Assembly (NCBI RefSeq): GCF_032062105.1
Contig: NW_026935419.1
Span: 558,001 to 622,000, forward strand
Reading direction: 5' to 3'
Source: Saccostrea cucullata
Lineage: Eukaryota
DNA length: 64,000 nucleotides
Made by a program: the position numbers and the translations under genes. Below the pieces are notes generated by a model, which saw only the letters and a program-made list of their open reading frames with translations, was not told the origin of the DNA and searched no databases. This document shows positions 1 to 42,270 of the stretch, piece after piece. Position 1 is the stretch's first letter, and each line of letters begins with the position of its first letter.

Positions 1-1534
1 TTTATATTACACTCGAAAAACTTGAGAGAAGCGAGACGAAAAGACCGTTTCCTAAAAGTAATCGTAATTTTAGAGGGAAAGTTTATACATGATCGGTGAA
101 AAAGCCCCCTCCCCCCATCCCCTACCTGAAAAACAGCAATATTAAAATCGTGTGGTGATGATCAGGGATAGTTTTTTTTATTATTTTAAAGAAAACGTAT
201 TCAAAATGTAACCTTTTGGCTTACCTAGTCATATTTCATTTTTTTTTTATTAATTGCTTTAGCAATTCAAAACATTATCCAGAAAAATATTCCATTTTCC
301 TATTTCACTGGAATCAGATACATTAAAAGAACACTTAAATGTTATGAGTCTTTACTTTTTTGCCTTTTCTCTTTTTCAAATGCGCACAAGTTCCTGCCGC
401 GAATGCCAATCAAATACGAGGGTTGTCCCGTAAAATCGTGGACAAAGCTTTTTTCTCGAAAAGTAATGGCCGCACTTAGTTGAAAATTTCAGTAAATGTT
501 TATTTATCATATTTAAGTGCATGATAATTTTTTTGATAAAATATAGGCAAAAATAAAGATTTTATTATAATTGTAACCTTTACGGCGCACGGTAAAAAAA
601 CCAAGGTTTTATTAAAGAATACACAAGTTTGAATTCAAAATAAAAGTTTTAAATACATAAGATTTGGATTAAAATTATCCTAATTCAATTGCACAATCAA
701 TTTTGTAGTCTTTGTAAAAATTTTAAGCCATTTGGTTAAAGTACATTAGAAAGTGGTAAACACAACACACGAAAAATGGCGACGTTTTATGACGTTACGG
801 CGCACCGGAGAGCAGTTCAGTTTTAATTCGATGTTGTAATGACACTTTTTGAGACTTGAAATGACCATAGAAGAAAAAAGATTATAAAAATATCACCATA
901 TCTTAAGTATACAAATGAAATAAGAGTTTTCTTAGCGAATTCTTTTTTGATCGAGTCCCTGGGGAGTACAAAACATACGGACAAACTTCTTATGTAATAG
1001 CAAAAGAAGCTGTCACAGTAGACCGCCGATATGAGATTTTCAATTAGTTGAATGATGGTGAGAATATTGTCCGTAACTTACTAATAAATCTTTTGCATGA
1101 GGGTGCCAATTGGTTCTTCGACTGTTTATGGAGACTAAAGAATGTGTATCAATGAAATTCCTAAATTTAAGTCGGACTCATCCAACTTCATTTTCAGCAA
1201 AGATAAAACGTGACGCTGTTTTAGACACTTTGACGTTAAAATCCATGCGCCGTAAGGTGATACAATACATGGCATAAAATTTCATAATTTGTTTATTTAT
1301 GCATATATTTATCTGAAATTTTTGTATATTACTAAAATATGTATTAATTAATAGTGAAAATTTCAGAACACAGTGATGTTTATTTTTCATACTAGACAAC
1401 TTGTCCACGATTTTACGGGACAACCCTCGTACATCCTCATTCTTTAAACTAGTAAAATAAAAGATATAAAAGAAAACTGTCGAAGACTTACCAATGTTGA
1501 GAAGGCAGACAGAAAATAGGGTTGAGAGGTACAT
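1..1534 (-). CDS. Possible 5' end of an unidentified minus-strand gene running off the left edge (candidate exons 1492..1534 and 1..51)
   Basis: TATAAAA on minus near 1570, ATG at 1534, hydrophobic MYLSTLFSVCLLNI, strong phase-1 donor G|gtaagt at 1492/1491. Acceptor tacttttag| at 51 continues open in frame (GNGLFVSLLSSFSSVII) to the edge. No homology recognised. Confidence 0.3.
417..1429. mobile_element. Non-autonomous Tc1/mariner-type DNA transposon (~1 kb MITE)
   Basis: Perfect 29-bp TIR CGAGGGTTGTCCCGTAAAATCGTGGACAA at 417 and reverse complement ending 1429; TA on both flanks; subterminal TTACGGCGCA motifs at ~580, ~795 and inverted at ~1245; no transposase ORF. Confidence 0.88.
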
Positions 1535-1899
1535 AATTTTGCTCTAGTCGATGATCCGTGGGGGAGAGTTTTTATACCACTAGGATCATTGAATAAGAGG
1601 AAACAGGTTGCAGAAATCAAATCAAATCCCCCACACTGGTCAGATTTCATGTATTGATAAGTAATTCTTTTAATTAATGAAATGGCACGGTATATCCTTT
1701 GTTTCCTTTATTTTCAAAAGAAAAATTTAGTCAAAAGCTAATTTATGCGTGTATCTGTGTGTGTGTGTCTGGGAGGGAGGTACTTATTAATCTATATTTT
1801 TACACAGAAGGTCCCTATTTACGAGTTCCGATTTGGGCATTTTGATACGAGACTGGAGCTGAATTTTTTTATGAGATGAAAAACAACATGTAAACTTCT

Positions 1900-2790
1900 T
1901 ACCCGCTTGAAAAGCAGGGAGGTAAATAGTTATGGCACGCCAAATTCACAAAAATGAGATAAACCTAGTTTCACAATTGTTAAACTAGGTTTATCGTCTG
2001 TAAACTATAGTTTACAAACCGTAAACTATAGTTAACGATTCGTTAAGTATAGTTTTCATCTGTAAAACTATATTTAACGGTCGTTAAGTATAGTTTACGA
2101 ATGCTAATCTAAGTTTATCTGTCTGAATAAAGCGTTAACAATAGATTTTGTTGATAAACATAGATTCACTTTGTAAACTATAGTTTACAATCGTAAACTA
2201 TAGTTAAGAGTTGTTAATCATAGTTTCACAAATCGTGAAACTATATTTATCAGATCGTTAACTATAGTTAACGGTTTGTAAACTATAGTTTACAAATCGT
2301 GAAACTGTATTTATCAGATAATCTATGTTTTGCAATCGCAAATGATAGTTTTCGGTGTTAAGTATAGTTTACGGTTGTGAAACATAGATTATCGCGTTAA
2401 CTATAGTTTACAGATGTAAAATATAGATTAACGTTGTTAACTATAGTTTACAATCCGTAAACTATAGTTTACAACCGATAAACCTAGTTTATCGATTGTG
2501 AAACTATGATTATCTCATTTTTGTGAATTTGGCGTGCCATAATTAGTGATGGGAGTTTCCGTCCGTCCGTTACGCTTTCGGGTACGCATCTCTTATCCGC
2601 TCCTCCCTTGTACCACTTAGTAAAATTTGATGAATCTTGCACAGAATCTTTGTTATGTGGTGCTATTGCGCACCTCCTATTTTACTTTATGACAGGGCAC
2701 ATACTTTGGGTTTCCCAAAACAAAACATTGATACTGCCATTCTTTCTATCATATTGAGGGGTACCCATCTCCTATCCATATTTTGCTATG
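1900..2790 (+). mobile_element. HINE-like (non-autonomous Helentron) element interrupted by a MITE
   Basis: Begins CCCGCTTGAAAAG, resumes after 2541 with GTCCGTCCGTTACGCTTT...; same sequence family at ~40868-41152 and ~51918-52408. Confidence 0.65.
1931..2541. mobile_element. TIR element filled with short palindromic repeats (AAACTATAGTTT-like)
   Basis: ~32-bp TIR TATGGCACGCCAAATTCACAAAAATGAGATAA and its reverse complement ending 2541; interior is degenerate ~20-22-bp units centred on AACTATAGTT in both orientations. Confidence 0.85.
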
Positions 2791-3070
2791 GGAAACTCGA
2801 AATCATGTCCGATCAAAAAGTAAAATACATAAAAGGTGCATTTTGGCATTATTTAACAAAGATTCTTTGAAAGTCTCATTAAATTTCATTCAGTAGTACA
2901 GGAGTTGTAGAAAAGAGAGGGGTACCCCATATTGTAACAGACGATTGACGTACTGACAGACGGACGAACACCCCCATCACTATATACCACCCTGCTTTTC
3001 AACTGGGTGTATAAAAATATTTTCGGATTTGGAATTAAAGAAAAATTAACAACTTGTCCAGTCTATTTCG

Positions 3071-3074
3071 GTGT

Positions 3075-3105
<31 letters not shown>

Positions 3106-3108
3106 GGG
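3071..3108. repeat. (GT)n microsatellite followed by poly-G
   Basis: gtgtgt... followed by a run of ~20 G. Confidence 0.8.
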
Positions 3109-3676
3109 TGATCACCCTGTTACCCTCTCTAGATCTGTGCATTGTCTGAAGCTGATCACAACATATATATTACCCACGCAATTCAGATTTTTTTTGGGGG
3201 GGGGGGCACAAACCTCACTCTCATGATATATTGCTCATTTAAGCATATATGTTGGTCACACTTATTGCACAGCAAATCAATACATATATCTTCAATCCAA
3301 AATTATTTATGCATTGATGACCTTTTTTTCCTCTAGTGGAAGTAATACACAATGATGTAAAATCTATCAGTTTATATTTCTGTAAATTTGATAAATGACC
3401 TCTTTTGATGAAAGCTGACAGAATTGATTAACAAATCAATATACTTTTTGATTACCTAATTTTTCACAGGGTGCAAAGTCAATAATTAAACAAGGAAACC
3501 CAACAGGTGTATTTGTCTACCTATCTTATTTCTGTAATATTTTTTATTGACTAGAAATGGAAAATGTGAATACAGGATAAAGAAAAGCTGCATCCTGCAG
3601 ATTTTGATAATCAGACTTCAATAATAATTTAAGTTTTGAGGTAATAAAAATATCACACACAATATTTTTGATGGTT

Positions 3677-3682
3677 TTTATT
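3677..3682 (-). terminator. Candidate ULK4 polyadenylation signal (AATAAA on minus)
   Basis: tttatt on plus ~245 nt downstream of the stop codon. Confidence 0.5.
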
Positions 3683-3924
3683 TTCATTTGATGAGGACGG
3701 AATGTTTAAAATTTTACAGTGAGATTTTGTACAAAAAAAGGGAGTCATAAACAAAACACACACAAGTATCTAGCAGTATATCAGCAATACACAAAAAACA
3801 TTAAACAAGTGTACAGTGTTCAGTGTACAGTGTCTTGAACAATACGAAATGATTCACTTTTAAAACACACTTCATTCTACAACCATGAACACATCCAATA
3901 TAAGGGGCGTGGCTAGTAATTTTT

Positions 3925-20042
<16,118 letters not shown>

Positions 20043-24472: not shown

Positions 24473-27400
24473 ATGCCTAACAGAAGAGACGACATCCACG
24501 CAGCTAATCGGAATTTCTGTGTGATTTTGGCCTTTCTGACCGTGTTAATCATTACCTTAATCAGTGTGGTGATTTATCTCTCAGTTAAAGACCGCGACAC
24601 CGAAGGTAAGTGATCGATCTAAACAAAAATGGTAAACGTGCGTACCTGCGTGTATCGTGCATAAAACGCATTGGCGGATCTTACGCGCGTCGTATGGCGT
24701 TTTCCGCTTAATTTTCAATTTCACTCGAAAGAATAATTACTTTGACCTTTATCCCCCCCCCAAAAAAAAAAGAGAGTACAGACATATTTTGTATGTACAT
24801 ATATACCGATAAAACAATTTTTGTATTTTTATTCCTTATTTTTTGTAGAAAACAATTCTTCAAAGATGATTACAAGTTCTCCTTTTGGAACTCATAATGG
24901 GAAGGAGGTCCTACAGTAAGTGCAGCTTTGTCGTGTCTAAAATCCATTACAAAGTTAGCAGAATGTAAAAATACTTTATACAAAATTTTCATAATAAGAC
25001 TAAATCAAGAATGGTGTAGGAAGCATGGGGGTGTTCCTAAAATTTTAATAATTTTTGCCGATATATATTACATTAATTAATAAATACGTCTAAATATAAA
25101 TATACTAAATATGAATATATGGAAATATGTTACCACAGCAATTACTTCTGATGAAATTCCGGGTGTTACTGTATTTCATTATCAAGGATTTTTTGCTTCA
25201 TAGCCCCCCCCCCCCTCCCAATGAAATTCTTCACTGCAGCCCTAATTTATGTTTTCATAAGCTGCGTTATAACAATAATTAATTTCAAAAAACCACTTAT
25301 TTACTATTTGTATTAAACATGAAACAGGGGAAATTATAGATTAACTTAGTAGCCAATAGTAGGTATATTGTTGTAATATACATTTAATGAATAGCTCAAT
25401 TCTGGAATTCAAACATGTGAAAGACATTTATTTGTAAATGATGGAAGAATTCATTCCAAAAAATATTTTTAATAAATTTTATTGGACCTTGGTGAAAACT
25501 GTTTACGTTATTTTTTGCCCCCCCCCCTTTAGTTTTCATTCTAAATTTTCCATATCTCGATTTAATTAATGTTTATTTAACATGTTTAAACATCTTCGAA
25601 ATATGTTCAAAATTTATTTTAGCAGTAATATTACCTTAAAATCGCTTGACATTTTTTTTTTTAAATTGGCATATTGATTTAAAATTCCGATTTATAGCAG
25701 ATATACCGATATTTTGAAGCGATACCACTTGTTAGTGGTATAACTCGATTCAGATTTATGTAGAATATAAAATTTTATATTTTAATATGTTAATTTTGTG
25801 CAGGTATACGTTAAAGAATAGTAAAGGGACAGAAATACGCATTCTAAACTATGGAGGAATTATCACAAATATTATGATACCGGACAAGACTGGGAAAATG
25901 GATGATATTTGTCTTGGTTTTGATGGCATGGAAGGTAATTAAACTAGCTAATTCAGACAATTGATGTCCCCCGCTTACGGTAAAAAAGAGCATGTGCAGA
26001 TGGGGGGGGGGGGGGGGCTCTCCACTGTATTTGCAGATTTATTTATCAAATAAGGAAATGCCAATATATATAGATACATGTATATAGATTTGATTGGTTA
26101 ATTTTTAAAATGTTTACAGAAAATTTGTTTTTATATAAAATAATTATAACTCTGTAATAATTATGATATTATGAGAAAGTTTATGTTCATGCCTGATCTC
26201 TCATAACTTCTTCTTTTCATATGTTGAATACTCAGTACTTTCTTCTAGTATATCTCTAAAAAAAAAAAAAAAAACTGGATAATTTGACTTTTTCTTTACT
26301 ATCATAAAAAAGTATGTCGTGAAAAGTCATATCCCATTTCATTTATTATAGATTTTACTTTAAAGTGTAATTGTCAGTAAAATTCAATGAATTGAATACT
26401 GACATTAAATGCAATATTTAATTTTTTTAATGAATTTATTTCAGGATATGCAACAAATGGTCCGTACTTTGGTGCTCTGATCGGGCGCTATGCTAACAGA
26501 ATAGCAAATGGCCGTTTTACTATTGATGGAAAAACATACCAGTTAGACATAAATAATAGTCCGAATGCCCTTCATGGAGGAAAAGTTGGATTTGATAAGG
26601 TAAGAGAAACTTGCGGCTTTTATCGTTTTTTATTATTGGAAAGAAAAATATATAAAGATTGGAAATCTGAAGATATTTTACGACTAATAAACATTCTACT
26701 AATTACTTTTTCTTGTTCAAATTAACCAAGTAAGATTCTCCCTTTTAGTCACAATAATGATTTATTTATAGCGATTATGGAGTTCGGAGATCGACGGTGA
26801 CGTCCTACAGCTGACCTACGTCAGCGCTGATGGAGAGGAGAAATACCCAGGAGAGGTCAAGGTCACCGTCCGTTACCAGCTGACCAATGACAATGAACTG
26901 GTCATTCAGTATTCAGCAACCACATCAGCAAAAACTGTCATAAATCTTACAAACCACGCCTACTTTAATTTGGCTGGACAGGTAATTGCAAAACGCAGTA
27001 ATTCTAATTCTGCGTGGGTGGGTCGAGGGGGGGGGGTTATTTGCAGCCAATTAAATTAAAACAGTTAAAACAATGTGAACATTCTAAGGAGACAATGGAC
27101 AAGTACCGTGAAGAACGTATGCATTGTTCAAAATTACAGGGGTAACTGCTTGAAAAATAGCGGTACATTTCATCATATATGCGAAGATGTAATATTATAA
27201 TGTTAATTAAAGAGTTTAGTATATCTACTGTACTCACACTATGTTTAAATAATTACAAAAATTATACGTTAATGTACCGTAGAAATTTTTGCGAAATCTT
27301 ATTTTTGCAAGATAGATATTGATTCTTGATAAGCGAAACAAAAATTTGACGTATTGGGTCATTGCTCTATATAATCCTAAGGAATACTATTATACGCGAG

Positions 27401-30400
27401 AATTTAATTTTCGGGAGCACACTGTCTCGCTTAATTACGCGATAATTAAGTTTTTGCGAATAAATAATTGTTGACTTACAGTACAGTTTACGTGCTGGAA
27501 TGAATAGGTCTCTTTTTAAAATGGTAATTTACCGGGAATTCTATGGTTCACATGTATTTTACACAACCTGAAAACATACTCTCTTACAATGATCAATAAA
27601 TTCATAGAATTTTCTATAAATCTAGCTATATGACTCCTCGTTGCATGCTAATATTAAGCTAATGTTTCGAGAAAAGGCGCAGGTAGCTCTAGATGATTTT
27701 TCTATGACCCTCTTGTTTACGAAATCTAGTACCTAAAATGTAAAGATCTGTCCCATGACTATAGATACTACATGCACTGACTTTTGACTTTCGAAGTGTG
27801 AATGATCTACGAGATGTTTTGTAGGAAATCCAACACCCAATACCCCTCTCAATACAGTTCTACAATAAAACATGGGAATTACGTAAATTGTACGTTATGA
27901 TTTGCTACATGTATTCACGGGACATTCAAAGATTTTTACGCAACTTTTTATTTGAAAAATTATGGAGAGTCATGACAACTTAATGGGGGAACAACAATTA
28001 CTGGCAAATTGGCTTTAATATACCAGGGAAAATAATTATATGCTGCTATTATTTCGGGTTGAAACATGGTGAATTGAGATAATTTCATATGCTTTGTCTG
28101 TACTTACATGTAAATGAATCTTAACAGGATTTTTTCCCTCACTAAAACTTGCTTTATCATGCTACTTTTAAGGGTTCTGGGAACATTTTTGGCCACAATG
28201 TGACTATAATGGCTGATCAATATACACCGGTGGATTCCACATCCATTCCTACTGGTAAAAGAAAAAAACTGCACTTGTGTTCATAAACATAATTTTATAA
28301 AATTCTCAATCTAGATAAATTATAGATTATCTAGATAAATCCAATATTATATTATGCGCAGCTCGTTTGAAACCCGATTGAATATCCGAATACGCTATTT
28401 CGTAATTTTCTTCACATAGATTTTGGCGCTGAAATAAACACTGTAATTATATTTATTAACAGGAGTAATAGAGAATGTAGATGGAACAGCTTGGGACTTG
28501 CGCACCAAAAAGAATCTGGGAGAAATGATTCCAACAGTTCCCGGTGATGTGGGTTACGATCATAACTACTGCTTCGGAAAAACTGGGTGGCGGAAGTACA
28601 TGGCCAGGTATGAGTAGATTAAAATGTATTGTTGTGGAAAGAATAGAAATGCGTCTTGATCGTATAGTGGTTTATTTTAGACTCTGTTATTAACTATAGA
28701 AACATAACGTACAGTATTGTGACGTAACAATAACGTTAACGTACGTTACATAAACCCGCGGATAATTTTAATGAATCATTAGAATATTAGAAAGTTCAAA
28801 TCAAATTAACAGTTTGGAAATTAAACAAGTTAATAATCACTTAATTAAGAGGTCCATTCACGATAATTTGGCTTTTGTTTTTGACACTCGATTAAAATAT
28901 ATTAAGTTCGTTCTCATTCACTTCGATTGGATATAGTTTCACAATTGGTCTGTTGGTAAGTCCATTTTTGGTCCGTAAAGTGGCAGCTCTAAGTTCTTTT
29001 GTATGAGTTCCTCGGAGTGTTTGTGACGTAGTTCTGTGTTAGATTTCTCCAACTCCATGTTTCGAGTCCGTAGATTGGCATTTTGTTTATTATCTCTGCC
29101 ATGTCCCTGAGATTCTTTTTCTGTGAATTTTCTTTTTCCTTCTCCTCAGTCTCTGTACGTTTTTCTGTCATCTGAGTTTCTTCCCTTCGTGTGTCATCAC
29201 GGATCCTTACGGAAAACATCTTTCTCTCTTCCACGGGATCCTGTAGGTTTGTAATTGATTTTCAAGTGTTTGTACTTTGATATTTAGCTCACTTATTTGC
29301 CTTTGGGCGTAATCATATCGTGACTGAAGACTGATGTTTTTAGCATTAAGATGCTCCAAGTGAGTGCTGTAGGTTTTGATATTAACAACCTGGTCCTTTA
29401 ATTCCTGAACCTCGTTATGCAAGTGTCCGTTTTCGTGCGCAAGTTTATTCATCTGTTCCATCATATCCTTCATCCCATTCTCCACACGAGTCTGAAAATT
29501 TCTTTGTTGGTCGAATTGTAACAATTTCTCTAGCAGGGTACCATTTTCTCCTTCCAATGCGTTCATCCTCTGTCTTAGTCTTCAGCTCTGACTTAAGTTG
29601 CTGTATCTCGTTAGTGAGCTTGCTACGTTCTTGAATGGAGTCCACAGTCCGACTCATCGGAGTGGAAGCTGATTTCCATAAAACACTTTTATGTCGTTGT
29701 TCAACGTTTATTTCTGTGGTATTTGGTTTGCTCGTTCCTACAATGTTGACAATTGTTGATTTGGTGGATTTTTCGTTAGTTTCATGTCGCATATATTGTG
29801 TTGCTTCTTCTGGCACTTTTTACATCTGTTGCGGGATTTACAATCTGCGGCGTGGTGGTTTCCTAAGCAGTTGAAACATAATTTTTCCGTTAACAGTCGA
29901 ATCTTGCTACTTATGTACTTTCTTACAGTCCCCTGGGAAGATTTTTACAACAATAAATGCATTCTTTATCTCTGTTGTTTCGACATAAGGAGTTGACTCT
30001 TTTGTTTTCTGGTTGTGTCCATAATGAACATGGCGTTGTTTCTTTGAGGCTCCGGTAAGAAACATTGCTGTTGCGTGGAATCGATCGCTGTTTTCAATCT
30101 GGCCTGATTCAAGGATTTTGACTTCCTTGCTGATAGCTTTACGAAGATTGTGTAGTGAAATGTTGTCACCATCGTACTCACGTGCAATGTTTTTCCTGAT
30201 TTCAGCTGGTAGCTTGTTCATTATGACTGGAATAAGTAAAGCTCCGTACATCTCTTGTTTTTGTCCTAGACACTCTAAACTCCTGACATGAGATTCCAAG
30301 CAGTCTCCATAATTTCTTAAACTGATGGCGTCGTTTTCGGGGCTTGCAGTTCCATAAGTGCTCTCATGTGACCATTGATGATTTTTTGTGGTTGACCAAA

Positions 30401-32035
30401 TCGTTCCTTGAGCAGGTCTATGGCGGTTTCGTAATTTGCGTTTGTGAGAGTAAATCCTGCAATGGTTTGTGCTGCTGCGTCCTGTAATTGAGCCTTGAGA
30501 TACGAAAACTTTTGAATTGGTGTTAAAGTTTGGTTGCGGTGAATTGTTGATTCAAATGAATCCCAAAACGTATTCCATTGTAGTATATCCCCGTCAAAAT
30601 GTGGAAGATTTAGTTTCGGTAGTCGATGATTATTTGTGACCTGGTTGGATGGTAATGACAAAAAAATTTTCTGCCAATCGTGGTTACTTTGTTCATCGAG
30701 ATCAGTGGCACTGGCAGGAAAATTGTTCAGAATATTCTCACAAGCCGTTTCACTTGAATTAATTGCAGCTGATGTGTTTACATTACTATCATGAATTTCT
30801 AAGGCGGGTACAAAACACTCAACACTGGCATTCAAAGTTTTACATGAAACTTTTTCTGTAAATGTTTCTATTTTCTTAATTTTGCAATCGAATTCGTACA
30901 TATACTCATCTGTGTTTGTGATTTCTTCTTCTATGTCCTCTTCAGATAATGCGTCTAATATGCGTTCATTTAGTTCTTGTAAAGTTTGTCTTTTTTGCAT
31001 TAGGGACTTTCTGATTATTTCGATTTCCTCCGTTACTTCACTGGCTGTATTTTCTTTCAGGTCCAAAAATCGTCCGAAAAGTTTCGTCACCGCTGATCTG
31101 TTACCGGCCCGTATGGCTTTTAGTCTTCCTTCCATTTTACGTATATTATGTAAACATTCCGTCGATCACGGCACCAAAATTGTTGTAGAAATGCGTCTTG
31201 ATCGTATAGTGGTTTATTTTAGACTCTGTTATTAACTATAGAAACATAACGTACAGTATTGTGACGTAACAATAACGTTAACGTACGTTACATAAACCCG
31301 CGGATAATCCGTGACATGTATGTTCCAGATTAGACGCAGGGGACATATCAAAGTTTTGAAAGTAGGGAGGGAGGTTGCCAGCCAGAGGAAAAAAAATTAC
31401 CTGAAAAAATCGACAAGCAAATAGAAGTTTAAACTTGAAAATCCTATTTCCGGGGGGGGGGGGGGGGGGGGGGGGGGGTGGAGTGAATTGAATCTCTTTC
31501 AATAACATCATACATCACCCCTATTTGTCTATTGTTATGTTGTAAATTTTGCCACCCGATAAATTCAAATCTTACAGACTTACAACATGGCACTATACTG
31601 AAACCGGGGGGGGGGGGGGGGGGGGGTCAATGAACAAAGGCATTTAACAACTTCTTTTTTTTTTCTTTTAAAGAGTGGAACATCCGAACACGGGTCGGTA
31701 TCTGGAAATGTACAGCACTGAACCAGGTGTTCAGTTTTATACGGCATTCTACCTAAACGAAACTGGAAAGGGCGGGGCCAAATACGGGAAATTTGATGCC
31801 TTTTGCCTCGAAGCCCAGCATTATCCAGATAGTCCAAACAAAGTAGGTTTCAGTGGCTACATTTCAGATATAATTTCGAGAGAGATTAACTCTGTTGCAC
31901 ATGTTCAAATGGTTTCTTTTCATAAATATTTGTTATTATTATTTTTTTTATTTTCAGCCAAATTTCCCCACAACATTACTAGCTCCATCGGAGACGTATC
32001 TACAAACCACGACATACAAATTTGGTGTCATGTGA
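24473..32035 (+). CDS. GALM: Aldose 1-epimerase (galactose mutarotase) paralog A, with N-terminal transmembrane extension, ~389 aa
   Basis: Exons 24473-24605, 24849-24915, 25804-25934, 26445-26599, 26772-26981, 28173-28254, 28463-28607, 31674-31842, 31958-32035 (1170 nt). Motifs [55 protein letters not shown] at 32121. Confidence 0.93.
27275..27483. mobile_element. Small TA-MITE in a GALM-A intron
   Basis: taccgta...ttacagta ends; core cgagaat..aattttcg.gagca.ac..tctcgc.taat.acgcga shared with a copy at ~55640-55730. Confidence 0.6.
28630..31316 (-). mobile_element. Non-autonomous BEL/Pao LTR retrotransposon in GALM-A intron 7
   Basis: Short near-identical LTRs (31181-31316, TG...CA; 28630-~28766); 5-bp TSD TGTAT at 28625-28629 and 31317-31321; PBS TGGTGCCGTGA (31166-31176, complementary to tRNA-His 3' end); DUF1759-type gag; Zn knuckles; integrase C-terminal tail [18 protein letters not shown] at ~28915-28990. 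Confidence 0.92.
29790..31135 (-). pseudogene. Frameshifted BEL/Pao Gag
   Basis: ORFs 30317-31135 ([29 protein letters not shown]...QKFSYLK...[14 protein letters not shown]) and 29907-30299 ([11 protein letters not shown]), then [27 protein letters not shown] in another frame. Confidence 0.88.
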
Positions 32036-32529
32036 TCTCATAACTTGATATTTTTTCTCATCATTCCTTTCTTTTGTACTACATTTACATATTATACCAT
32101 GATTTGATTGATTATAAGTCAATAAATTAATTCCATGATCTTCATTGCGTTTTTAGGAATCTTTTTAATAGGTGGCATCTTATGCTCACATCCACTGAAT
32201 TTTTTTTCTCATGGAAATCGGATATTTATCGTGTCCATCGAAGGCAAGGAACTATTAATTTATTTCTAAACTATAGTTTATTTCAATTGAATCAAGAATT
32301 GATTATCGGAAATTGAATGTACAGTAACTACAAACACATGAATGATAAAAGTAAAAGATAAAATCACACATGGGTATCCAACAATGGAGGGCTCAGCTAG
32401 TGGTCATGCATGACTATATAATTCATGTATAGCTGTTGACCTCCTGAAATGGAAATAAAAGATTGCGGTCGTGAGAAGAGTGCTAAATGATGAGTGACAA
32501 TCCCCAAGGATCCACCGCTGTAATTTATT

Positions 32530-32670
32530 AAGGAATAACTGTCTTATTTTTCGAATTCATGAAGTGATCAATGGATTGGCTTGTGTGTTAATTTTATTCA
32601 TAAAAGCCATCGGCGTTTATGCAAATTATAACACAAGCCAATCCATTGATCATCTTCATATGATAACATA
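32530..32670. mobile_element. Hairpin MITE (copy 1)
   Basis: aaggaataactgtc...gatcaatggattggctt / aagccaatccattgatc inverted arms; same family as 35348-35475. Confidence 0.65.
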
Positions 32671-33659
32671 TCCAAGCCTGCTTCTCTCAACGTGGTTTTT
32701 TTTTTTAAACAGGAAATCAATTACACTTACTGGAAATGTATTTTTGTAAATATGATAACATATCAATAAACAGGTCCACTTACTAGTATTTTTGAGTGGC
32801 TACTGAACTGGACTTAAAACGAGATAAAATTGTATGCTTATTAAAAGCTTGACTTTGTTTATGTGCTGTTCGATTAAGGTAAGTAACGATTAGGGCCTAA
32901 CATAGGGGCTTGGCATCAGGATGGTGTATTTTGTGTATTATGTGTTTTTCTAGGTGTGTCTGAATACCCTCATTAAAATAAAAATTCGCTGAAATTAGCA
33001 CGTTCTAAAAATGTCATATTTACAGTATATAGTTAAAAAGAGTAAAGGAGCACCACTTGCCATCTTCGATTTGAGGTGGTGCCTCGGTTCACACTTGATT
33101 TAAATCAATATCTACTTATTTCCTACCGGTGTTGGGTGAGATCTAGCTTAAAAAATGATTGAATAATGCCTTTCAAACGTCTGCCGATTTGAACTTGCCA
33201 TATAAAACATGCAGTTATACGAGTAAACCCAAAACGTCCTCTATACGAAGTACAGAAATTGAAAGCAACAGAAGTGTCGATTTCTAACGATGAAAAATCT
33301 AGAGGCGTCCCGGAATAACATGGAAAATCTAGAGAGAACAAGTTTGGCGCGGTATCTGACCTCTAGATTTTCACACGCCGTGTGCTCCTTGTCTTGATCG
33401 GGAAATAATGCGATGGAAAAAATCCATGGAAACTCAGTTTGTAACTAATGGTCTAACAATTAACGATTAATTGTATTTACTGACAAGGACATTATATCGA
33501 CCATTGAATTCACGAAATGAGGACTTAAAACAAGATATTCCTGCTCCATCAACTTGTTTGTCAATAACTTACATGTACCTTGTCTTACAAATTGAATAGA
33601 AATCAGGCATAGAACATACTCTGCCGTATCGAATCAGCTGAGAGATACATACCCCGTAT

Positions 33660-35475: not shown

Positions 35476-37315
35476 TGGTCTAAAAAAAAAAAGGTCTTTA
35501 CCATGTTTACTCTGATGTCTCTTATTTGGTGGGGCAATAGGGCAAGGTCATGAGCAAAGTCCAGGTCTTCTAAAAACTATGATCAATAAATAGCTCCCAG
35601 CCTCCCTGCTATCAGTAACATTTGATCTGGGTTAATTTTATAAATAATCGTTACCCTTTAGCAAATTTCATACAGTGTCAATTTTTGAAGGCTACTTTCC
35701 CTACGAGTAATGATATGATGTTGTATCTTGGACCTTGAACGCTTTAACAAACGTAAACAAATATTGTTTCATAGATGAAAACTGAAAATTTCAAAATTGA
35801 AAATATTACATGTAGTTACAATAGATGAACTTATCTTATTAACTGGAATACACGTAAGTCTACTCACGACATCTCTTGAAATTCAGGTCAAGTATTCCGA
35901 AACTTTTCTTTCCACGTGAATCATTCCGGTAAATTTTTAAACGTACAATTTCCTCTTCTGTTTTCGCAAAAGTGTTATTTGGTTTTGCTTTGTAGAAGTT
36001 GTTTGTACGTGTAAGTTTTTTTAGTCGTTTAATGACACGGGGTTGTAAGTATGGGAATATGAACAGGTGTGCATTTACGTTGTACTTTTGCTTGTAAAAG
36101 TACAATCTTATAATTTTTGTTGTTGTTGTTCAGCATTGTCCGTCGAACGAATTTTGCTTCTTGTTTGGTGAGATGTAACCGTTATGTTTATGTTAAGAAA
36201 ACTACTATAATATACTGTAGCTGATTTTTTGAATGCTGTTATACAGAATGGCCGAGTCGACTATCCATTCAAACGAATTTAAAAAAAAAGGGGGGGGGCT
36301 TAACACCAGATCAGCATGCTGCAGCAGATTAATGATAACATATGACCAGTCTAAACGAACTCCTGAAAAGGAGTTATCAACAGTTAGAAATTGAGGCTAA
36401 AATAATGTGGAAAATAAATATGTGCTTAGGCACAAACACAAAAAAAATGTTGATTTAGGGGAAAAATTATGAATCTGCAAAAATGCCTACACGCACAAAA
36501 TGCTACAAAAATGGTAGGATAAGAGTATATTTATTAAATTTAAGATTCTATTTGTGACTTAAATTACTTTCTCAGTTGACATTTCAAGCATTTCAAGCAT
36601 TCTTATTAGAGTAAAAAATCAAACTTTCAACATATTTTAAAGAAGCATAATAAAAAGGAGATATATGAAAAATAGAACAACATGTGTTGCATCTGTTATA
36701 AGCTTCTCCATCTTTTACTTTTTAAAGTATCTGGTTAAATTGGAGGATAGGGTATAGGTAATAAGAATTTACCATGGAAATATATAAATTGAAAAGCAGA
36801 GTATTAAATCGTAAGGATTGCAATTTTTCCTTTCTCCTTTCTTGCTTTACTTTGTATTTTTTTCTGTTGTTGTTCAATGTTGTTCAAGATGTGGATCATG
36901 GGTTAGGGTTGGACTAAAATTGGAAATTAATTTAGTTAACAAAATGCATATACGGTACATGAAAAGGCATGAAAAAAAAGAACAGATAAAAAAAAAAGAA
37001 AAGAAATATATGTTTAAAAATCTTCCCCAGAGGAGTAAAGCCAAGTACCAGTAAGTCATCTGGATATACTTAATGTTATGTAGATTAAATCTATAAACCC
37101 TCAAGGCAAGACTGGTACCACAATATTAAAAAAAATATATTTCAAAATTAGCGGGTAAAATCTTATAATAATAATCTTCTGAAGTCAGCAGAAAGCAAAC
37201 GATTCAGGTGAATATGGTGGCCCATGGGCCTCTGCTGTGTGTATGGTCACTGTATCATGATTATTTTTTGTTTGTTTGCTTTGAATAGAAGACTGTTAAC
37301 TAACAAACATCTACC

Positions 37316-40300
37316 ATGATCACAAGTTCTCCATTTGGGACCTATGATGGGAAAGAAGTCATACAGTAAGTGATATTTGATTTAAAAAAAAATAATTCAT
37401 GTAAAATGCACCAATAATGTTTTTAAACTTGGTTATATTTTCCTCTCTCTTATCTAAATTAAAATTACACTGATATAAACAGGAGAATGTCTATAAATTT
37501 ACAGTTTAAAGCAGTGGAGAACAAAAATTTAATTGTCATGTACATTTGCATTATACACAGTTCATGAAAAGTTTGTCATGCTAATAAATACCAAATTGCT
37601 TATTCACAAAAATAAGGTGTCATGAAAATACTAGTAAAGTGATCTACAGTATACCATGTAAGTGGAAATTTTATTGAGACAAAGAACTATATGCCGTATT
37701 AACCAACATTTGCCCCCCAAAATCAAACTTTGATGGAGTAACATTTAATTAAGTCCTTAAACAGGGGAGTATATGCTGACTTCAACGCACTGAAGAATTT
37801 CATAAGTAATGACGTCATATGTACGTAATGACGTCACAAATATGACGTAATTTCAGTTTTTTATGAATTTTGCAGAAAAATGTACATATTTCGTCGATAT
37901 TTTAAATAAAAGTCACCGAGCGCATGTGTGTTCAGGATAAATATTTTGATATAATGGGTAGAATGATAATATCAATGGAATATGTCAATACTGTTCCTGA
38001 ACACACATGCGCTCTATAAATTTTAAAGCTTAAATTGTTGAAATTTTGTCCATTTTGTCCTCTTTCTGAAAAAGGATATAAAATCGGACTAGTTTGTGAC
38101 GTCATAAAAACAGAAATTGTGAATACACTTCTCTGGAACTATAATATTTTCTGTTAACTTATATTTCTCGTACAATTTATTGAATTCAGCACATTTCATG
38201 AAGTTTTCAAAATTTGACTTTTGTGGGGGCAAACATATGCAATATACCGCATATAGTTCTTTAGCGATTTGTCCTTAAAAACTGGTAATTTATTTTTAGC
38301 GAGATGTTATTTAAGCGATTTTAAAAAGCACATTAAAGAAACTATTACATGTAAAACGCAATTAATTTTTAGCGATATTCAATTTTAACGATCTCGACAC
38401 CCTCGGTAATAATGCCAAAATTAAATCCTCGCTAAAAATTCTACTTATACGGTATATGCAAATTTAAGTGTTGTTTGATGGGGATCACACTTCACTGGGT
38501 TTAGTCCCTTATAAGGAAATATGTTTAGTTATACATGTAATAGCATTAGTCTTTTTAGACAAATTATTTTTGCTAACAAGGTCATTACAACAACCATAAA
38601 ATTTTGAATTGCAGACCTTAAACAAGGTTGTTGAAACCCTTGTAACATCAACTTTTCAGTACGTAGCAAGCCTTGTTTTAAAAATTAATTGTACTCAGAG
38701 CAAACTCTCAGGTAAAGAATAAGTTGGGAGATATAGACACCATAAACAGGTGATAGTGGAATATTAATTCATAAAAAGAAGGGAAGTTGTTGTTGGAAAA
38801 TCTGAATCGAATTCATTGTGTTTGTCAGAATTTTTGTTCTTATGAGTAAACTTTATTTGGAATTATTTGGATATTAAACTAGAATGACAATTTATGTAGG
38901 GACTTTCTTTTATCAAATGTGTGCAGATATACCCTAAAGAACAGTCAAGGCACAGAAATACAAATCCTAAATTTTGGAGGAATCATCAAAACGATTTTGG
39001 TACCAGATAAAAATGGAAAGATGGAAGACATTTGTCTTGGTTATGATGACATGAAAGGTGTGTTTGAAAATTTCTTCCTGTGTCCTGTTTTTTGTAAAGG
39101 AAGAGACCTCTAGTTGGAAAAAAAGACAATTGATTAAAAAATGTTGGATAAACAAATTATTGGTCTATATACATGTACAATTAAAAATAATTGCTTTGTG
39201 ATTTTAGTGGTAGAACTGTTTTAAGATGAAGATTTTTTCTTTTAATCTGGAAACACAGAAACTAAAAAATGTTTAAGAAAATTTTCTATAATTTACCATT
39301 GGAAAAAGAAGTGAAAATATGTATGTCTAAACTCTAAAAATGTTGTTTCTTTGCCTAGGGTATGAGACAAATCCCTTTTACTTGGGTACTCTGTGTGGAC
39401 GCTTTGCCAACAGGATTGCAAATGCCTCTTTTATTATTGATGGGAAAACATATGAATTAGACAAAAATGATGGTCAGAATTCGTTACATGGAGGAAAAGG
39501 TGGTTTCCATAAAGTAAAGTACTTTTGATATTTACATTCAATTTACTACATATAGTTGAAACCCATATTTTATTGAAAGAATTTGCTACATAAAGGTCAA
39601 AGCCAAATTTGAAGGAATGACTGTTTTGGGGTGCCATGCTGTTTTGTCTTTTTTAAAATCTTGAAGAATTAGATATACATTTTTTTTAAATTTGAATTTC
39701 TAAACTCCATGATTGCTGTTTAAAATGATTTGGTCATAACAAGCAGTTATAATGCTTTCTTGCAGAAAGTATGGACTCCAGAGATTGACGGTGACGTCCT
39801 GAAATTGACCTACGTCAGCCCTGACGGGGAGGATAAATTCCCTGGGGAACTCAAGGTCACTCTCTGTTACCAGCTGACCGATGACAATGAATTGGTCATG
39901 CAGTACTCAGCAACTACATCAGCAAAAACTGTCATCAATCTGACAAACCACGCCTACTTTAATTTGGCTGGACAGGTAATCGGTTTGTGATGAATGTATG
40001 CAGATTCGTCTGAGTACTACAATGCACTATGAAAATTCAGCACAATACAAGGTATTAAACTTTTTCCTTTTACAGTTTTGATTTTTTGCAATGGACTTCT
40101 TGTTTTTTAGGGTGCTGAGAACATCTTTGACCATGATGTGACCATAAAAGCTGATCAGTATACACCACAAGATTCCACTTACATTCCAACAGGTAATGTA
40201 AAGAGATAGATAGTGAGAATACATGTATATCAAATTTGTGAAGCTTTTTTTTTTTTTACATCAAACCATAAAACATATTGATGTACACTTACTGAAAAAC

Positions 40301-41287
40301 TCCATACAGTATAAATCTCATCTGTTATTTGTCATTAACAGGAGCCATAGAAAGTGTAGAGGGTACACCCTTTGACTTACGCACAGCTAAAAATATTGGG
40401 CAGATGATTCCACGAGTTCCAGGAAATGTTGGCTATGCTCATAACTATTGCTTTGGGACAACTGGCGATAAAAAATTCATGGCAAGGTGTGAGCTTTTTT
40501 TTGCTTTCATTGAGCATCAGCTTTTCAGATTACCTTTCAAAAAAAAAATGTGTGAACATCATTTCCGATTTTTTTTTTAATTCTCTTTTTATCTTTCCTA
40601 GAGTAGAGCATCCTGCCTCTGGTCGATATTTAGAGGTGTACAGCACTGAACCAGGACTTGTGTTTTATACCTCATACTATTTAAATGAAACAGGAAAGGG
40701 CGGGGCCAAGTACCAGAAATACGGAGCCTTTTGTCTGGAAGCTGCACATTACCCGGATAGCCCAAACAAAGTGAGTTTCAGCTTAACTTAAGCTGAATTG
40801 AGGTCTATTGATTATAATTCATCATTTTTATCCCCCCTAGGTGGGGGAGTATGGCCTGTGTTTAATTATACCCCCTGCTTGAAAAGTGGGAGGGTATATA
40901 GTAATCGGTATTTCCGTCTGTCCGCCTGTAACGCTTTGGGGTACCCATCTCTTATCCGCAACTCCTCTCATACCACTGAAGGAAATTTAATGAAACTTTC
41001 ACAGAATCTTTATTACATATTGCCATTGTGCACCTCCTATTTTACTTTTTGATCTGACATATATTTTTGATTTTCCAGAGCAAAACATGGATACTGCCAT
41101 ATGGGAGGGGGGGGTATCATTTAGTGAGCTCATTGCTCACAGTACCTCTAGTTATGAAATAATACAATTATGATGATTTATTAATTAATATTTTTATTTC
41201 TATTTTTAGCCAAATTTTCCTTCAACATTACTTGATCCCTCTGAGACTTATCAACAAACTACTTCATACAAATTTGGAGTAATGTGA
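37316..41287 (+). CDS. GALM: Aldose 1-epimerase paralog B (no N-terminal anchor, altered sugar-binding residues), ~339 aa
   Basis: Exons 37316-37365, 38927-39057, 39359-39513, 39766-39975, 40111-40192, 40342-40486, 40602-40770, 41210-41287 (1020 nt; downstream exon sizes identical to paralog A). Motifs [48 protein letters not shown]. In-frame TAA lies shortly upstream of the ATG. Confidence 0.93.
37650..38455. mobile_element. Nested MITEs in the first coding intron of GALM-B
   Basis: Inner element 37681-38262 with TIR aagaactatatgc.gtatt...tttgccccc and inverse; outer ends taccatgtaagtggaaattt / aaattctacttatacggta. Confidence 0.7.
40868..41152 (+). mobile_element. HINE-like element in the last intron of GALM-B
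   Basis: ccccctgcttgaaaagtgggagggtatata...gtctgtccg...gtgagctcattgctcacagtacctctagt; same family as ~1900 and ~51918. Confidence 0.7.
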
Positions 41288-42270
41288 TTCATATTTTGTC
41301 AGCAATATTCTACATGTATATCTGTGTATTACTTCCTGGGTATTTGTACTTTATATATTTTGTAGAACAAATTTAGCAATAATGAAAATACTGCCTTTTG
41401 TACAGAACTTCAAGCATTGTGACAAAAAAATCTCTGTAATCAGAGATGTATATATGATATACATTATATCAATTTTTTGTTTGGAAGTTTACACTATGGT
41501 CCAAAGTTATCATTGTGACACAAACTCCGCTGCTGGCAGCCAAGTTTTCAATATGTGAATAAGAATGTGAAAATAAAAGGGCACAAAATAAAACATCATT
41601 TTGCTGCTTTTATTTTGTCTAATACAATAAATGCTACAACAGACTTCAGCTGTGTATCAGTTGTTTTGCTTGGATTTGATTCTATGATCCAAAGTAATCA
41701 GTGTAAGCCCCTTCCCATAGCCACTGCGTGGACTGACAGAATGCAAATTACCGGTAAATGACATCTATGTAGGAACACAACACACAACATCAAGTTCCCA
41801 CAGCAAGACTTGAACCAGTGGATATAACTTTTTTGTCAACCGCTTTCAGTGGAGGGACATTTAATCTCAATTGTCTATCCATCCGTTAATCAGTCTGTCT
41901 GTCTCAAAAATTTTAACCTCATTCATTATTTTTGAATGAGAAGAGATAAGACTTTCATAGTTTTTTTTTAGATACATTTAGAATTTATGATATTTGACAT
42001 GCTAGGACCATTTTTGAAACACACTATGCAGCTGATTTTCCATTCCGAGGTCTAATCTTTTCTTCTAACATGACTCTACATGTACTAGATCTCTTCCAAT
42101 TGAAGTTACTTAAACTTGTTTATTCAAATTACTACCTGGCTATTTCTTGAGGGGTCCATTCCCCTTTTCGATTCTATCTGATTGATACTGAATTCTTATA
42201 TGTCATCTGTATTATCTACAACTCGGCAGATTTTATCGCTGCCAAAATTTCAAAGGTGCTAAGAAGTTAC

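What the first reader, a model, noticed from the sequence alone, without database searches (positions are those of the whole stretch)
40342..40770. GALM paralog B keeps the catalytic pair but has remodelled the sugar-binding pocket
Seen: versus paralog A, GYDHNY becomes GYAHNY (GCT 40437-40439), PGVQFYT becomes PGLVFYT (GTG 40660-40662), CLEAQH becomes CLEAAH (GCA 40744-40746), and GFDK becomes GFHK. The catalytic His (TNHAYFNL), Glu (CLE), LHGG His and ANR are intact and the ORF is unbroken. Established: the Asp of the G[FY]DHN motif and the Gln of VQFYT (human D243 and Q279, numbering from memory) line the sugar site. Inference: several polar-to-small or hydrophobic changes concentrated in the pocket suggest a different substrate (deoxy, N-acetylated, methylated or sulfated sugar) rather than decay.
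Basis: partly seen in the sequence, partly recalled or inferred. Interest (0 to 1): 0.78.

Follow-up and report, generated by a model that had tools for sequence, protein, structure and literature searches.

The report
Rock-oyster mutarotase duplicate with rebuilt sugar pocket
Rock oysters (Saccostrea) carry a second, expressed and evolutionarily conserved copy of the sugar-anomer enzyme galactose mutarotase that keeps its catalytic residues but has swapped four highly conserved polar residues (two of them known sugar contacts) for small or hydrophobic ones, so it probably handles a different sugar, which nobody has tested.

Summary
The window comes from Saccostrea cucullata. It holds two tandem 8-exon, 339-aa GALM genes, A (24866-32035) and B (37316-41287), which are 75.5% identical.

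B equals the annotated XP_062580894.1. It carries D111H, D242A, V277L/Q278V and Q306A. It keeps Asn78, Arg79, His104, His174 and Glu304.

Asp242 and Gln278 correspond to human Asp243 and Gln279, two of the seven residues that surround galactose in human GALM. In 210 relatives these columns and Gln306 are 95-98% conserved, and none has Ala at 242.

B is not decaying:
- The S. echinata ortholog (XP_061174702.1, 90.6% identical) has the same four codons.
- Between the two species dN/dS is about 0.12.
- B is transcribed and spliced as modelled.
- The key codons show no listed variant in RNA reads from divergent samples.

After the duplication B took 36 fixed replacements against 6 in A. The stem-branch omega is about 0.39 against a background of 0.07 (p about 7e-8).

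No B copy lies at the syntenic place in Ostrea edulis, and no B-type protein was found for Magallana. The duplication is therefore probably Saccostrea-specific.

A changed substrate remains an inference. This is a new variant of a known enzyme kind, of moderate interest.

The parts
37316..37365 (+). GALM paralog B, exon 1 (start codon ATG 37316). The bases before the ATG are CC, not the AG acceptor that paralog A has.
   Evidence: Gene model. Splice joint 37365>38927 seen in RNA reads.
38927..39057 (+). B exon 2
   Evidence: Joints 37365>38927 and 39057>39359 (the latter reported as 39055>39357, cut +2).
39359..39513 (+). B exon 3. It carries Asn78/Arg79 (39409-39414), His104 (39487-39489) and the D111H change (CAT 39508-39510). 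It is the exon richest in B-specific replacements.
   Evidence: An RNA contig of run X1 covers it with no difference at the His111 codon.
39766..39975 (+). B exon 4, with catalytic His174 (39949-39951, TNHAYFNL). A possible short gene-conversion tract with A lies here.
   Evidence: Joint 39513>39766.
40111..40192 (+). B exon 5 (82 nt)
   Evidence: GT-AG on both sides. Its two joints were not among those listed (4 joints were not shown).
40342..40486 (+). B exon 6, with D242A (GCT 40437-40439) in GYAHNY
   Evidence: Joint 40486>40602 (reported as 40484>40600, cut +2).
40602..40770 (+). B exon 7, with V277L/Q278V (40657-40662), catalytic Glu304 (40738-40740) and Q306A (40744-40746)
   Evidence: Joint 40770>41210 and an X2 RNA contig identical over 40675-40770.
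41210..41287 (+). B exon 8 and stop codon
24866..32035 (+). GALM paralog A (comparator). It has 8 exons of the same lengths as B: 24866-24915, 25804-25934, 26445-26599, 26772-26981, 28173-28254, 28463-28607, 31674-31842, 31958-32035. It has the canonical pocket (Asp111, Asp242, Gln278, Gln306).
   Evidence: Identical to residues 51-389 of XP_062580892.1.

Best explanation
B is a tandem duplicate of the bivalve galactose mutarotase gene that probably arose in the Saccostrea lineage. It encodes a soluble 339-aa aldose 1-epimerase.

B keeps the ring-opening machinery: the general base Glu304, the general acid His174, and His104, Arg79 and Asn78, which hold the sugar near the ring oxygen and C1/C2. 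The far side of the sugar cleft has been rebuilt. Asp242 and Gln278 are the equivalents of human Asp243 and Gln279, which contact the sugar. They are now Ala and Val. The near-invariant neighbours Gln306 and Asp111 are now Ala and His.

Shown here:
- The gene is intact, transcribed and spliced.
- It folds as a GALM.
- It went through a burst of amino-acid change right after duplication.
- It has since been held under purifying selection in at least two species.

Inferred: it still catalyses mutarotation, but its sugar preference is shifted or broadened towards substrates that lack, or carry substituents on, the hydroxyls normally gripped by Asp/Gln. Candidates are deoxy or O-methylated hexoses, otherwise modified hexoses, or the reducing end of an oligosaccharide.
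For: - Gene model: 8 GT-AG exons with the same lengths as A, giving 339 aa with no stop. The model is identical to XP_062580894.1.
- Family and fold: PF01263 at 277 bits and NF008277 at 288 bits, above its cut-off of 240. The AlphaFold model has pLDDT 97.2, and its best PDB match is human GALM 1snz at TM 0.97 and rmsd 1.2-1.4 A.
- Residue mapping to human Asp243, Gln279, Glu307, His176, His107 and Asn81/Arg82. The list of seven residues around galactose is quoted in PMC11441068. L. lactis Asp243 is named among the sugar-anchoring residues in PMC5622589.
- Conservation in 210 relatives: Asp242 95.7% (never Ala), Gln278 95.2%, Gln306 98.1%, Asp111 85.5%.
- Asymmetric change after duplication: 36 fixed replacements on the B stem against 6 on the A stem. 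The four most conserved columns hit are exactly these four.
- Q278V and Q306A each needed two nucleotide changes. The codons are identical in both Saccostrea species.
- Ortholog: S. echinata P0169 shares all four changes, has the same tandem order and is 90.6% identical.
- Selection: B-B dN 0.044, dS 0.35-0.42, omega 0.10-0.14. In the branch model the B stem has omega 0.39 against a background of 0.071 (2dlnL 29.1), and the B tips have 0.115.
- Expression: five of the seven splice joints are seen in oligo-dT RNA-seq. No variant is listed at the key codons, although nearby SNPs are listed.
- Recurrence: loss of Asp and Gln together recurs in an abalone paralog clade (Thr + Met/Leu) and in P0044 (Asn + Leu).
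Against: - No enzymatic data exist for B.
- No atomic coordinates were available to me, so I could not measure distances or dock sugars.
- I could not show that Asp111 and Gln306 contact the sugar.
- The stem omega (0.39) is below 1 and marginally different from 1 (2dlnL 4.2). Gene-wide positive selection is therefore not shown, and the burst could be relaxed constraint followed by renewed constraint.
- From memory of Thoden et al. 2003 (paper not held): the L. lactis D243A/N mutants are impaired rather than re-targeted. D243A still crystallises with galactose (1nsm title).
- Expression depth is modest.
Confidence: 0.55

Rival explanations
1. B uses the same substrates with different kinetics. 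It is still a galactose/glucose mutarotase, but losing two sugar hydrogen-bond partners raises Km or lowers kcat/Km. It is kept as a low-affinity, dosage or tissue-specific soluble isozyme next to A, which makes both membrane-anchored and soluble forms.
For: - All catalytic and proximal binding residues are intact.
- The L. lactis D243A mutant still binds galactose in crystals (1nsm).
- B lacks the splice acceptor that A uses to join its membrane-anchor exon.
- Purifying selection fits any retained function.
Against: - Purely quantitative weakening would not need three 95-98%-conserved polar residues replaced.
- Two of the replacements came through double-nucleotide changes and then stayed frozen in two species.
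- A is itself annotated with a soluble 339-aa isoform in S. echinata (P0168), so there is no obvious compartment gap for B to fill.
Confidence: 0.25
2. B has a non-enzymatic or moonlighting role. It would be a sugar-binding or protein-binding module (sensor, lectin-like or regulatory) that keeps the catalytic residues only as binding determinants.
For: - The same genome holds GALM-like paralogs that have lost the catalytic Glu (CLIPMQ) or the ANR motif, so this family does drift away from catalysis in oysters.
- Some PDB neighbours of the fold are non-enzymatic subunits (NDH-PSI entries).
Against: - B keeps every catalytic residue and the Asn/Arg/His set.
- Omega at the B tips equals that of A.
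- Nothing suggests a new interface.
Confidence: 0.12
3. B is a decaying duplicate, a redundant copy on its way to becoming a pseudogene.
For: - Amino-acid change was accelerated after duplication.
- Sugar-contact residues were lost.
- No B copy is seen in Ostrea or Magallana.
Against: - The frame is intact in two species separated by dS of about 0.35.
- Omega is about 0.12 on both B tips.
- The codons at the four sites are identical in both species.
- The gene is transcribed and correctly spliced.
Confidence: 0.04

Closest known systems
Human galactose mutarotase GALM (PDB 1snz/1so0) and the oysters' own paralog A
   Same: - Same Pfam family and same fold (TM 0.97, 45% identity to the human enzyme).
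- Same length and the same 8-exon structure as paralog A.
- Same catalytic Glu and His, the second His, and the Asn-Arg pair.
   Different: - Asp243 becomes Ala and Gln279 becomes Val. These are two of the seven residues around galactose.
- Gln309 becomes Ala and Asp114 becomes His (human numbering).
- There is no membrane-anchored isoform.
Engineered Lactococcus lactis GalM D243A / D243N (PDB 1nsm, 1ns8; Thoden et al. 2003)
   Same: The same Asp-to-Ala replacement at the homologous position. The mutant still binds galactose in the crystal.
   Different: - The bacterial protein is a laboratory point mutant, described (from my memory of the abstract) as defective in substrate positioning.
- B is a natural protein with three further coupled changes, and it is kept by purifying selection.
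Aldose-1-epimerase family members with other specificities: sulfoquinovose mutarotase HsSQM/YihR (PMC5902678) and yeast hexose-6-phosphate mutarotase YMR099c (PDB 2ciq)
   Same: The same superfamily and the same conserved His/His/Glu chemistry, with specificity set by the rest of the pocket.
   Different: - These are distant subfamilies (11-19% identity) and differ in the C6 subsite.
- B sits inside the classical GALM subfamily and differs at the Asp/Gln subsite.
Abalone (Haliotis) GALM paralog clade (P0184, P0187, P0309, P0310, P0317)
   Same: A molluscan GALM paralog that keeps the catalytic residues and has lost the same Asp and Gln together.
   Different: - Independent origin in gastropods.
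- Different replacements (Thr and Met/Leu).
- Gln306 is retained.
- It is also uncharacterised.

Membership tests
Aldose 1-epimerase family (Pfam PF01263) | Profile match above the curated cut-off over the whole domain | tested here: met
   277.3 bits against a cut-off of 27, covering residues 17-335 and profile positions 2-299 of 299.
Aldose 1-epimerase family (Pfam PF01263) | Beta-sandwich mutarotase fold | tested here: met
   AlphaFold model with pLDDT 97.2. Foldseek top hit is human GALM 1snz, TM 0.97 and rmsd 1.2-1.4 A.
Classical galactose mutarotase (GALM/GalM, EC 5.1.3.3) | Catalytic base Glu (human Glu307) and catalytic acid His (human His176) | tested here: met
   Glu304 and His174 align with these residues. 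The columns are 100% and 99.5% conserved.
Classical galactose mutarotase (GALM/GalM, EC 5.1.3.3) | Second His (human His107) and the Asn81/Arg82 sugar anchors | tested here: met
   His104, Asn78 and Arg79 are present.
Classical galactose mutarotase (GALM/GalM, EC 5.1.3.3) | Sugar-contact Asp (human and L. lactis Asp243) | tested here: not met
   Ala242 (GCT 40437-40439). The column is 95.7% Asp and never Ala in 208 relatives.
Classical galactose mutarotase (GALM/GalM, EC 5.1.3.3) | Sugar-contact Gln (human Gln279) | tested here: not met
   Val278 (GTG 40660-40662). The column is 95.2% Gln.
Classical galactose mutarotase (GALM/GalM, EC 5.1.3.3) | NCBIfam models for galactose-1-epimerase | tested here: inconclusive
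   The subfamily model NF008277 scores 288.5, above its cut-off of 240. The equivalog TIGR02636 scores 317.5, below its cut-off of 397.65, but canonical paralog A also falls below it at 326. The equivalog therefore does not discriminate here.
Classical galactose mutarotase (GALM/GalM, EC 5.1.3.3) | Measured interconversion of alpha- and beta-D-galactose/glucose | not testable with these tools
   Needs recombinant protein and polarimetry or NMR exchange spectroscopy.

The most novel reading that the evidence does not exclude
B and, independently, the abalone Thr/Met clade would be the first animal GALM-subfamily mutarotases dedicated to a non-canonical sugar. Candidates are a deoxy, O-methylated or otherwise modified hexose, or the reducing end of a dietary or algal oligosaccharide. 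Paired loss of the Asp243/Gln279 clamp would be the specificity switch. That would make the tandem A/B pair a natural before-and-after system for how mutarotase specificity evolves.
Probability: 0.3. Interest if true: 0.6.

Novelty: new variant of a known kind. Interest (0 to 1): 0.45.

Why it matters
Mutarotases are usually treated as broad, housekeeping Leloir-pathway helpers, and what sets their specificity is poorly mapped outside bacteria. Here a young, datable duplicate differs from its canonical neighbour by few changes. Those changes include the natural equivalent of a well-studied laboratory mutation (D243A), and the gene is demonstrably kept by selection. Two proteins, A and B, could be expressed side by side to test whether the Asp/Gln clamp is the specificity switch. 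The answer would help interpret the many pocket-variant GALM paralogs in molluscs. It is a useful enzymology lead, not a new kind of system.

Tried and rejected
- Single-sequence AlphaFold of B gave an unusable model (pLDDT 36). It was replaced by a run on a 100-sequence alignment.
- The exon-7 search of 1.84 billion representatives and the word search for exon-sized ORFs found only A-like fragments (PGVQFYT/CLEAQH). B-type sequences are hidden there by clustering or by the length window. They appeared only when a spliced relative (P0155) and then P0169 were used as queries.
- The look-up of encoding contigs returned nothing for P0001, P0151, P0168, P0293 and P0289, because they are not the longest product or the records are withheld. 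P0402 gave only a transcript. No Magallana genomic flank could therefore be checked.
- Thoden et al. 2003 and 2004 are not held in the paper library. The kinetic effect of D243A/N is quoted from memory only.
- No literature on oyster GALM paralogs was found.
- Model coordinates are not exposed to scripts, so I could not do distance, clustering-in-3D or docking tests of 'concentrated in the pocket'.
- The AU test could not settle the order of A, B, Ostrea and Magallana.
- The decay reading is rejected (see rival explanations).
- Cross-mapping of A transcripts onto B is rejected. A and B exons are 72-87% identical, and reads had to be at least 95% alike.

Full report
**What is in the window**

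The region is eukaryotic and AT-rich, and the window holds no N. Two galactose-mutarotase genes lie head to tail on the + strand.

I defined the exons from A-versus-B similarity and from splice sites. Both genes have eight exons of identical lengths (50, 131, 155, 210, 82, 145, 169 and 78 nt). All introns are GT-AG. Both give a 339-codon frame without stops.
- A runs from 24866 to 32035.
- B runs from 37316 to 41287.
- The proteins are 256/339 (75.5%) identical, with no indel.

The finding's span, 40342-40770, is exactly B exon 6, intron 6 and exon 7.

The joined sequence was used only inside sandbox scripts built from window coordinates. Later it was used through the database id P0390, which turned out to be identical to my model.

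**Whose genome**

- P0288 (XP_062580892.1, galactose mutarotase-like isoform X1, Saccostrea cucullata) matches A at 100% over 339 residues.
- P0390 (XP_062580894.1, galactose mutarotase-like, S. cucullata) equals B exactly.

The gene is therefore annotated, but only by homology.

**The observation**

| Residue in B | Codon and coordinates | Motif | Paralog A |
|---|---|---|---|
| Ala242 | GCT 40437-40439 | GYAHNY | Asp |
| Leu277-Val278 | CTT GTG 40657-40662 | PGLVFYT | Val-Gln |
| Ala306 | GCA 40744-40746 | CLEAAH | Gln |
| His111 | CAT 39508-39510 | GFHK | Asp |

Asn78, Arg79, His104, His174 and Glu304 are retained.

Alignment to human GALM (1snz; chain index = residue + 2) pairs these residues as follows:

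| B | Human GALM |
|---|---|
| Ala242 | Asp243 |
| Val278 | Gln279 |
| Glu304 | Glu307 |
| His174 | His176 |
| His104 | His107 |
| Asn78/Arg79 | Asn81/Arg82 |
| Ala306 | Gln309 |
| His111 | Asp114 |

PMC11441068, quoting Thoden et al. 2004, lists Asn81, Arg82, His107, His176, Asp243, Gln279 and Glu307 as the residues around galactose. PMC5622589 lists L. lactis Arg71, His96, His170, Asp243 and Glu304 as the sugar-anchoring set.

So two of the seven documented contacts are replaced. I could not document a sugar contact for Gln309 or Asp114. In the model, residue 306 lies two places after Glu304 on the same beta strand (301-306), so its side chain should face the same way. That is an inference.

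**Family membership and fold**

- PF01263 scores 277 bits. NF008277 scores 288 bits, above its cut-off.
- The bacterial equivalog TIGR02636 is missed by both A and B, so it is uninformative.
- With a 100-sequence alignment (A1) AlphaFold gives pLDDT 97.2 and pTM 0.94.
- Foldseek puts human GALM first (TM 0.97, rmsd 1.2-1.4 A, 45% identity).
- The same list shows that L. lactis D243A and D243N mutants were crystallised with galactose (1nsm, 1ns8).

**How unusual the changes are**

This sample is biased towards GALM-like bacterial and animal proteins. The columns are:

| Column | Conservation |
|---|---|
| Asp242 | 95.7% (never Ala) |
| Gln278 | 95.2% |
| Gln306 | 98.1% |
| Asp111 | 85.5% |
| Five retained residues | 97-100% |

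Only B and its ortholog combine these changes.

Asp and Gln tend to be lost together:
- An abalone paralog clade has Thr plus Met/Leu.
- P0044 has Asn plus Leu.
- P0018 has Val278 together with His111.

This suggests the positions act as a unit. Again, that is an inference.

**Is it decay?**

No. Saccostrea echinata has the same tandem pair on one chromosome-scale contig:
- A is P0168/P0391.
- B is P0169 = XP_061174702.1.

P0169 is 90.6% identical to B and carries GFHK, GYAHNY, PGLVFYT and CLEAAH. I mapped the exons and recovered both S. echinata coding sequences; their translations equal the database proteins.

Pairwise estimates:

| Comparison | dN | dS | omega |
|---|---|---|---|
| B-B | 0.044 | 0.35-0.42 | 0.10-0.14 |
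| A-A | 0.036 | 0.31-0.39 | 0.09-0.12 |
| A-B | 0.13-0.15 | 0.72-0.99 | 0.15-0.19 |

The four key codons are identical in the two B genes. Q278V (CAG>GTG) and Q306A (CAG/CAA>GCA) each needed two nucleotide changes.

**A burst, then constraint**

I used other ostreid A-type sequences to polarise the changes. 36 replacements are fixed on the B stem against 6 on the A stem. The four most conserved columns hit are Q306A, D242A, Q278V and D111H. Twelve of the 36 lie in codons 62-112, the exon that carries the Asn-Arg and His104 loops. There B-versus-outgroup dN is 0.22, against 0.026 for A.

A GY94-F3x4 branch model that I wrote and fitted to six coding sequences gives:

| Model | omega | lnL |
|---|---|---|
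| One ratio | 0.095 | -3613.26 |
| B stem as foreground | 0.39 (background 0.071) | -3598.70 |
| B stem fixed at 1 | 1 | -3600.80 |

- The foreground model improves on one ratio by 2dlnL 29.1 (p about 7e-8).
- Fixing the stem at 1 costs 2dlnL 4.2.
- The B tips have omega 0.115 and the A tips 0.096.

The burst is real, but gene-wide positive selection is not demonstrated.

**Expression**

Two oligo-dT RNA-seq runs read as raw reads (X21, X22) and two runs held as contigs (X2, on record as RNA; X1, whose RNA status is the index's guess) were laid on 36200-42000. This was 5,801 letters, within the limit.

- Five of the seven predicted joints are seen, all GT..AG and with 2-30 reads per run in the raw-read runs: 37365>38927, 39057>39359, 39513>39766, 40486>40602 and 40770>41210.
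- The two joints flanking the 82-nt exon 5 were not among those listed.
- Exon depth is modest.
- The very deep stretches 37558-38527 and 40856-41243 are intronic repeats.
- No variant is listed at any of the four key codons, although nearby SNPs of similar depth are listed (40466, 40623, 40674).
- An X2 contig is identical over 40675-40770. An X1 contig covers exon 3 with no change at His111.
- Of the 21 listed exonic SNPs, 13 are synonymous. Several non-synonymous ones match S. echinata states. The RNA therefore comes from a divergent lineage that still keeps the pocket changes.

**Age and distribution**

- In a protein tree of 38 molluscan and brachiopod GALMs, B falls inside a fully supported ostreid clade. 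Its stem is 0.24, against 0.038 for Saccostrea A. The order inside that clade is open.
- With the Ostrea edulis coding sequence added, codon and third-position trees group Saccostrea A with B against Ostrea plus Magallana (99.7/82 and 97.9/98). An AU test does not reject the alternatives (p 0.38-0.43).
- The O. edulis locus has the same upstream neighbour (ULK4), one A-type gene, and no GALM exon in the 10 kb downstream. In Saccostrea, B starts 5-8.5 kb after A.
- A search with P0169 found only A-type proteins (about 77% identical to P0169) for O. edulis, Magallana gigas and M. angulata, and a 64% one for Pinctada.
- The most economical reading is a duplication in the Saccostrea lineage before S. 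cucullata and S. echinata split. An older duplication followed by loss elsewhere and some gene conversion is not excluded; exon 4 shows third-position identity up to 0.85 in S. cucullata.

**Mechanism**

- Shown: B is an intact, expressed, selectively maintained GALM-fold protein. Its catalytic and proximal binding set is complete, and two documented distal sugar contacts plus two near-invariant neighbours are replaced.
- From established knowledge: Glu307 abstracts the anomeric proton and His176 protonates the ring oxygen. From my memory of the abstract of Thoden et al. 2003: Asp243 serves substrate positioning.
- Inferred: B still opens the pyranose ring but no longer clamps the far hydroxyls. 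This favours sugars that are modified or lacking there, or larger substrates.

Rivals:
- Same sugars with weaker binding: 0.25.
- A non-catalytic role: 0.12.
- Decay: 0.04.

**Verdict**

The 'new substrate' half is plausible but untested. This is a lineage-restricted variant of a well-known enzyme. It is of moderate interest and offers a clean experimental test.

Noticed in passing
window 24473-24915; P0288 residues 1-50: Paralog A's membrane-anchor isoform is not a Saccostrea gain. Similar N-terminal anchors appear in A-type proteins of S. echinata (P0391), in oyster A-type transcripts of unnamed species nearest Magallana (P0290, P0292), in Pinctada (P0287) and in Tegillarca (P0179). The longer isoforms of scallops and Mytilus (383-394 aa) were judged by length only. 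B cannot use the same splice, because the bases before its ATG are CC where A has AG.
   Followed up: partly
G000 contigs C9115 (28-30 kb, 39-41.5 kb, 188.5-192.5 kb), C598, C7430 (148.8-158.3 kb), C7447 (90.4-94.2 kb); loci L001-L026: The genome holds at least five further GALM-like genes with more radical active-site changes. Two have VNV in place of ANR, and one of these also has Asp>Phe and Gln>His. Two have TER in place of ANR and CLIPMQ in place of CLE, so the catalytic Glu is lost. One is canonical. The family is expanded and diversified in this oyster.
   Followed up: partly
G000:C598:7.7-11.7 kb versus G000:C9115:188.5-192.5 kb: These are two near-identical copies of the canonical extra GALM gene. 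C598 is only a 14.5-kb contig, so it is probably an uncollapsed haplotig rather than a real duplicate.
   Followed up: no
window 37558-38527 and 40856-41243: Intronic stretches of B show very high RNA depth, many loose ends and odd joints in all four runs. They look like transcribed repeats or transposable elements and are unrelated to B expression.
   Followed up: no
window 39766-39975 versus 26772-26981: Exon 4 of A and B is unusually alike in S. cucullata: 87% nucleotide identity, third-position identity up to 0.85, and local dS 0.46 against 0.67 in S. echinata. A short gene-conversion tract between the tandem copies is possible.
   Followed up: partly
proteins P0184, P0187, P0309, P0310, P0317 (Haliotis): An abalone GALM paralog clade has independently replaced the same Asp (by Thr) and Gln (by Met/Leu) while keeping the catalytic residues.
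   Followed up: partly
L031 (Ostrea edulis OX387708.1) 1-6300 and 29630-33295: ULK4 lies upstream of GALM-A in O. edulis. An earlier first-reader note of this scan places a ULK4 exon in this window at 12906-14444, which I did not check. O. edulis exon 5 is three codons longer, and the annotated gene spans 23 kb with long N-terminal isoforms that carry a Med15_N-like hit.
   Followed up: no
window 38973-39903 (B exons 2-4), RNA runs X21/X22/X1: The RNA samples labelled as the same species differ from the assembly at many exonic sites (most reads are 95-99% alike). Several of their amino-acid states match S. echinata B. This fits with S. cucullata being a complex of divergent lineages.
   Followed up: partly
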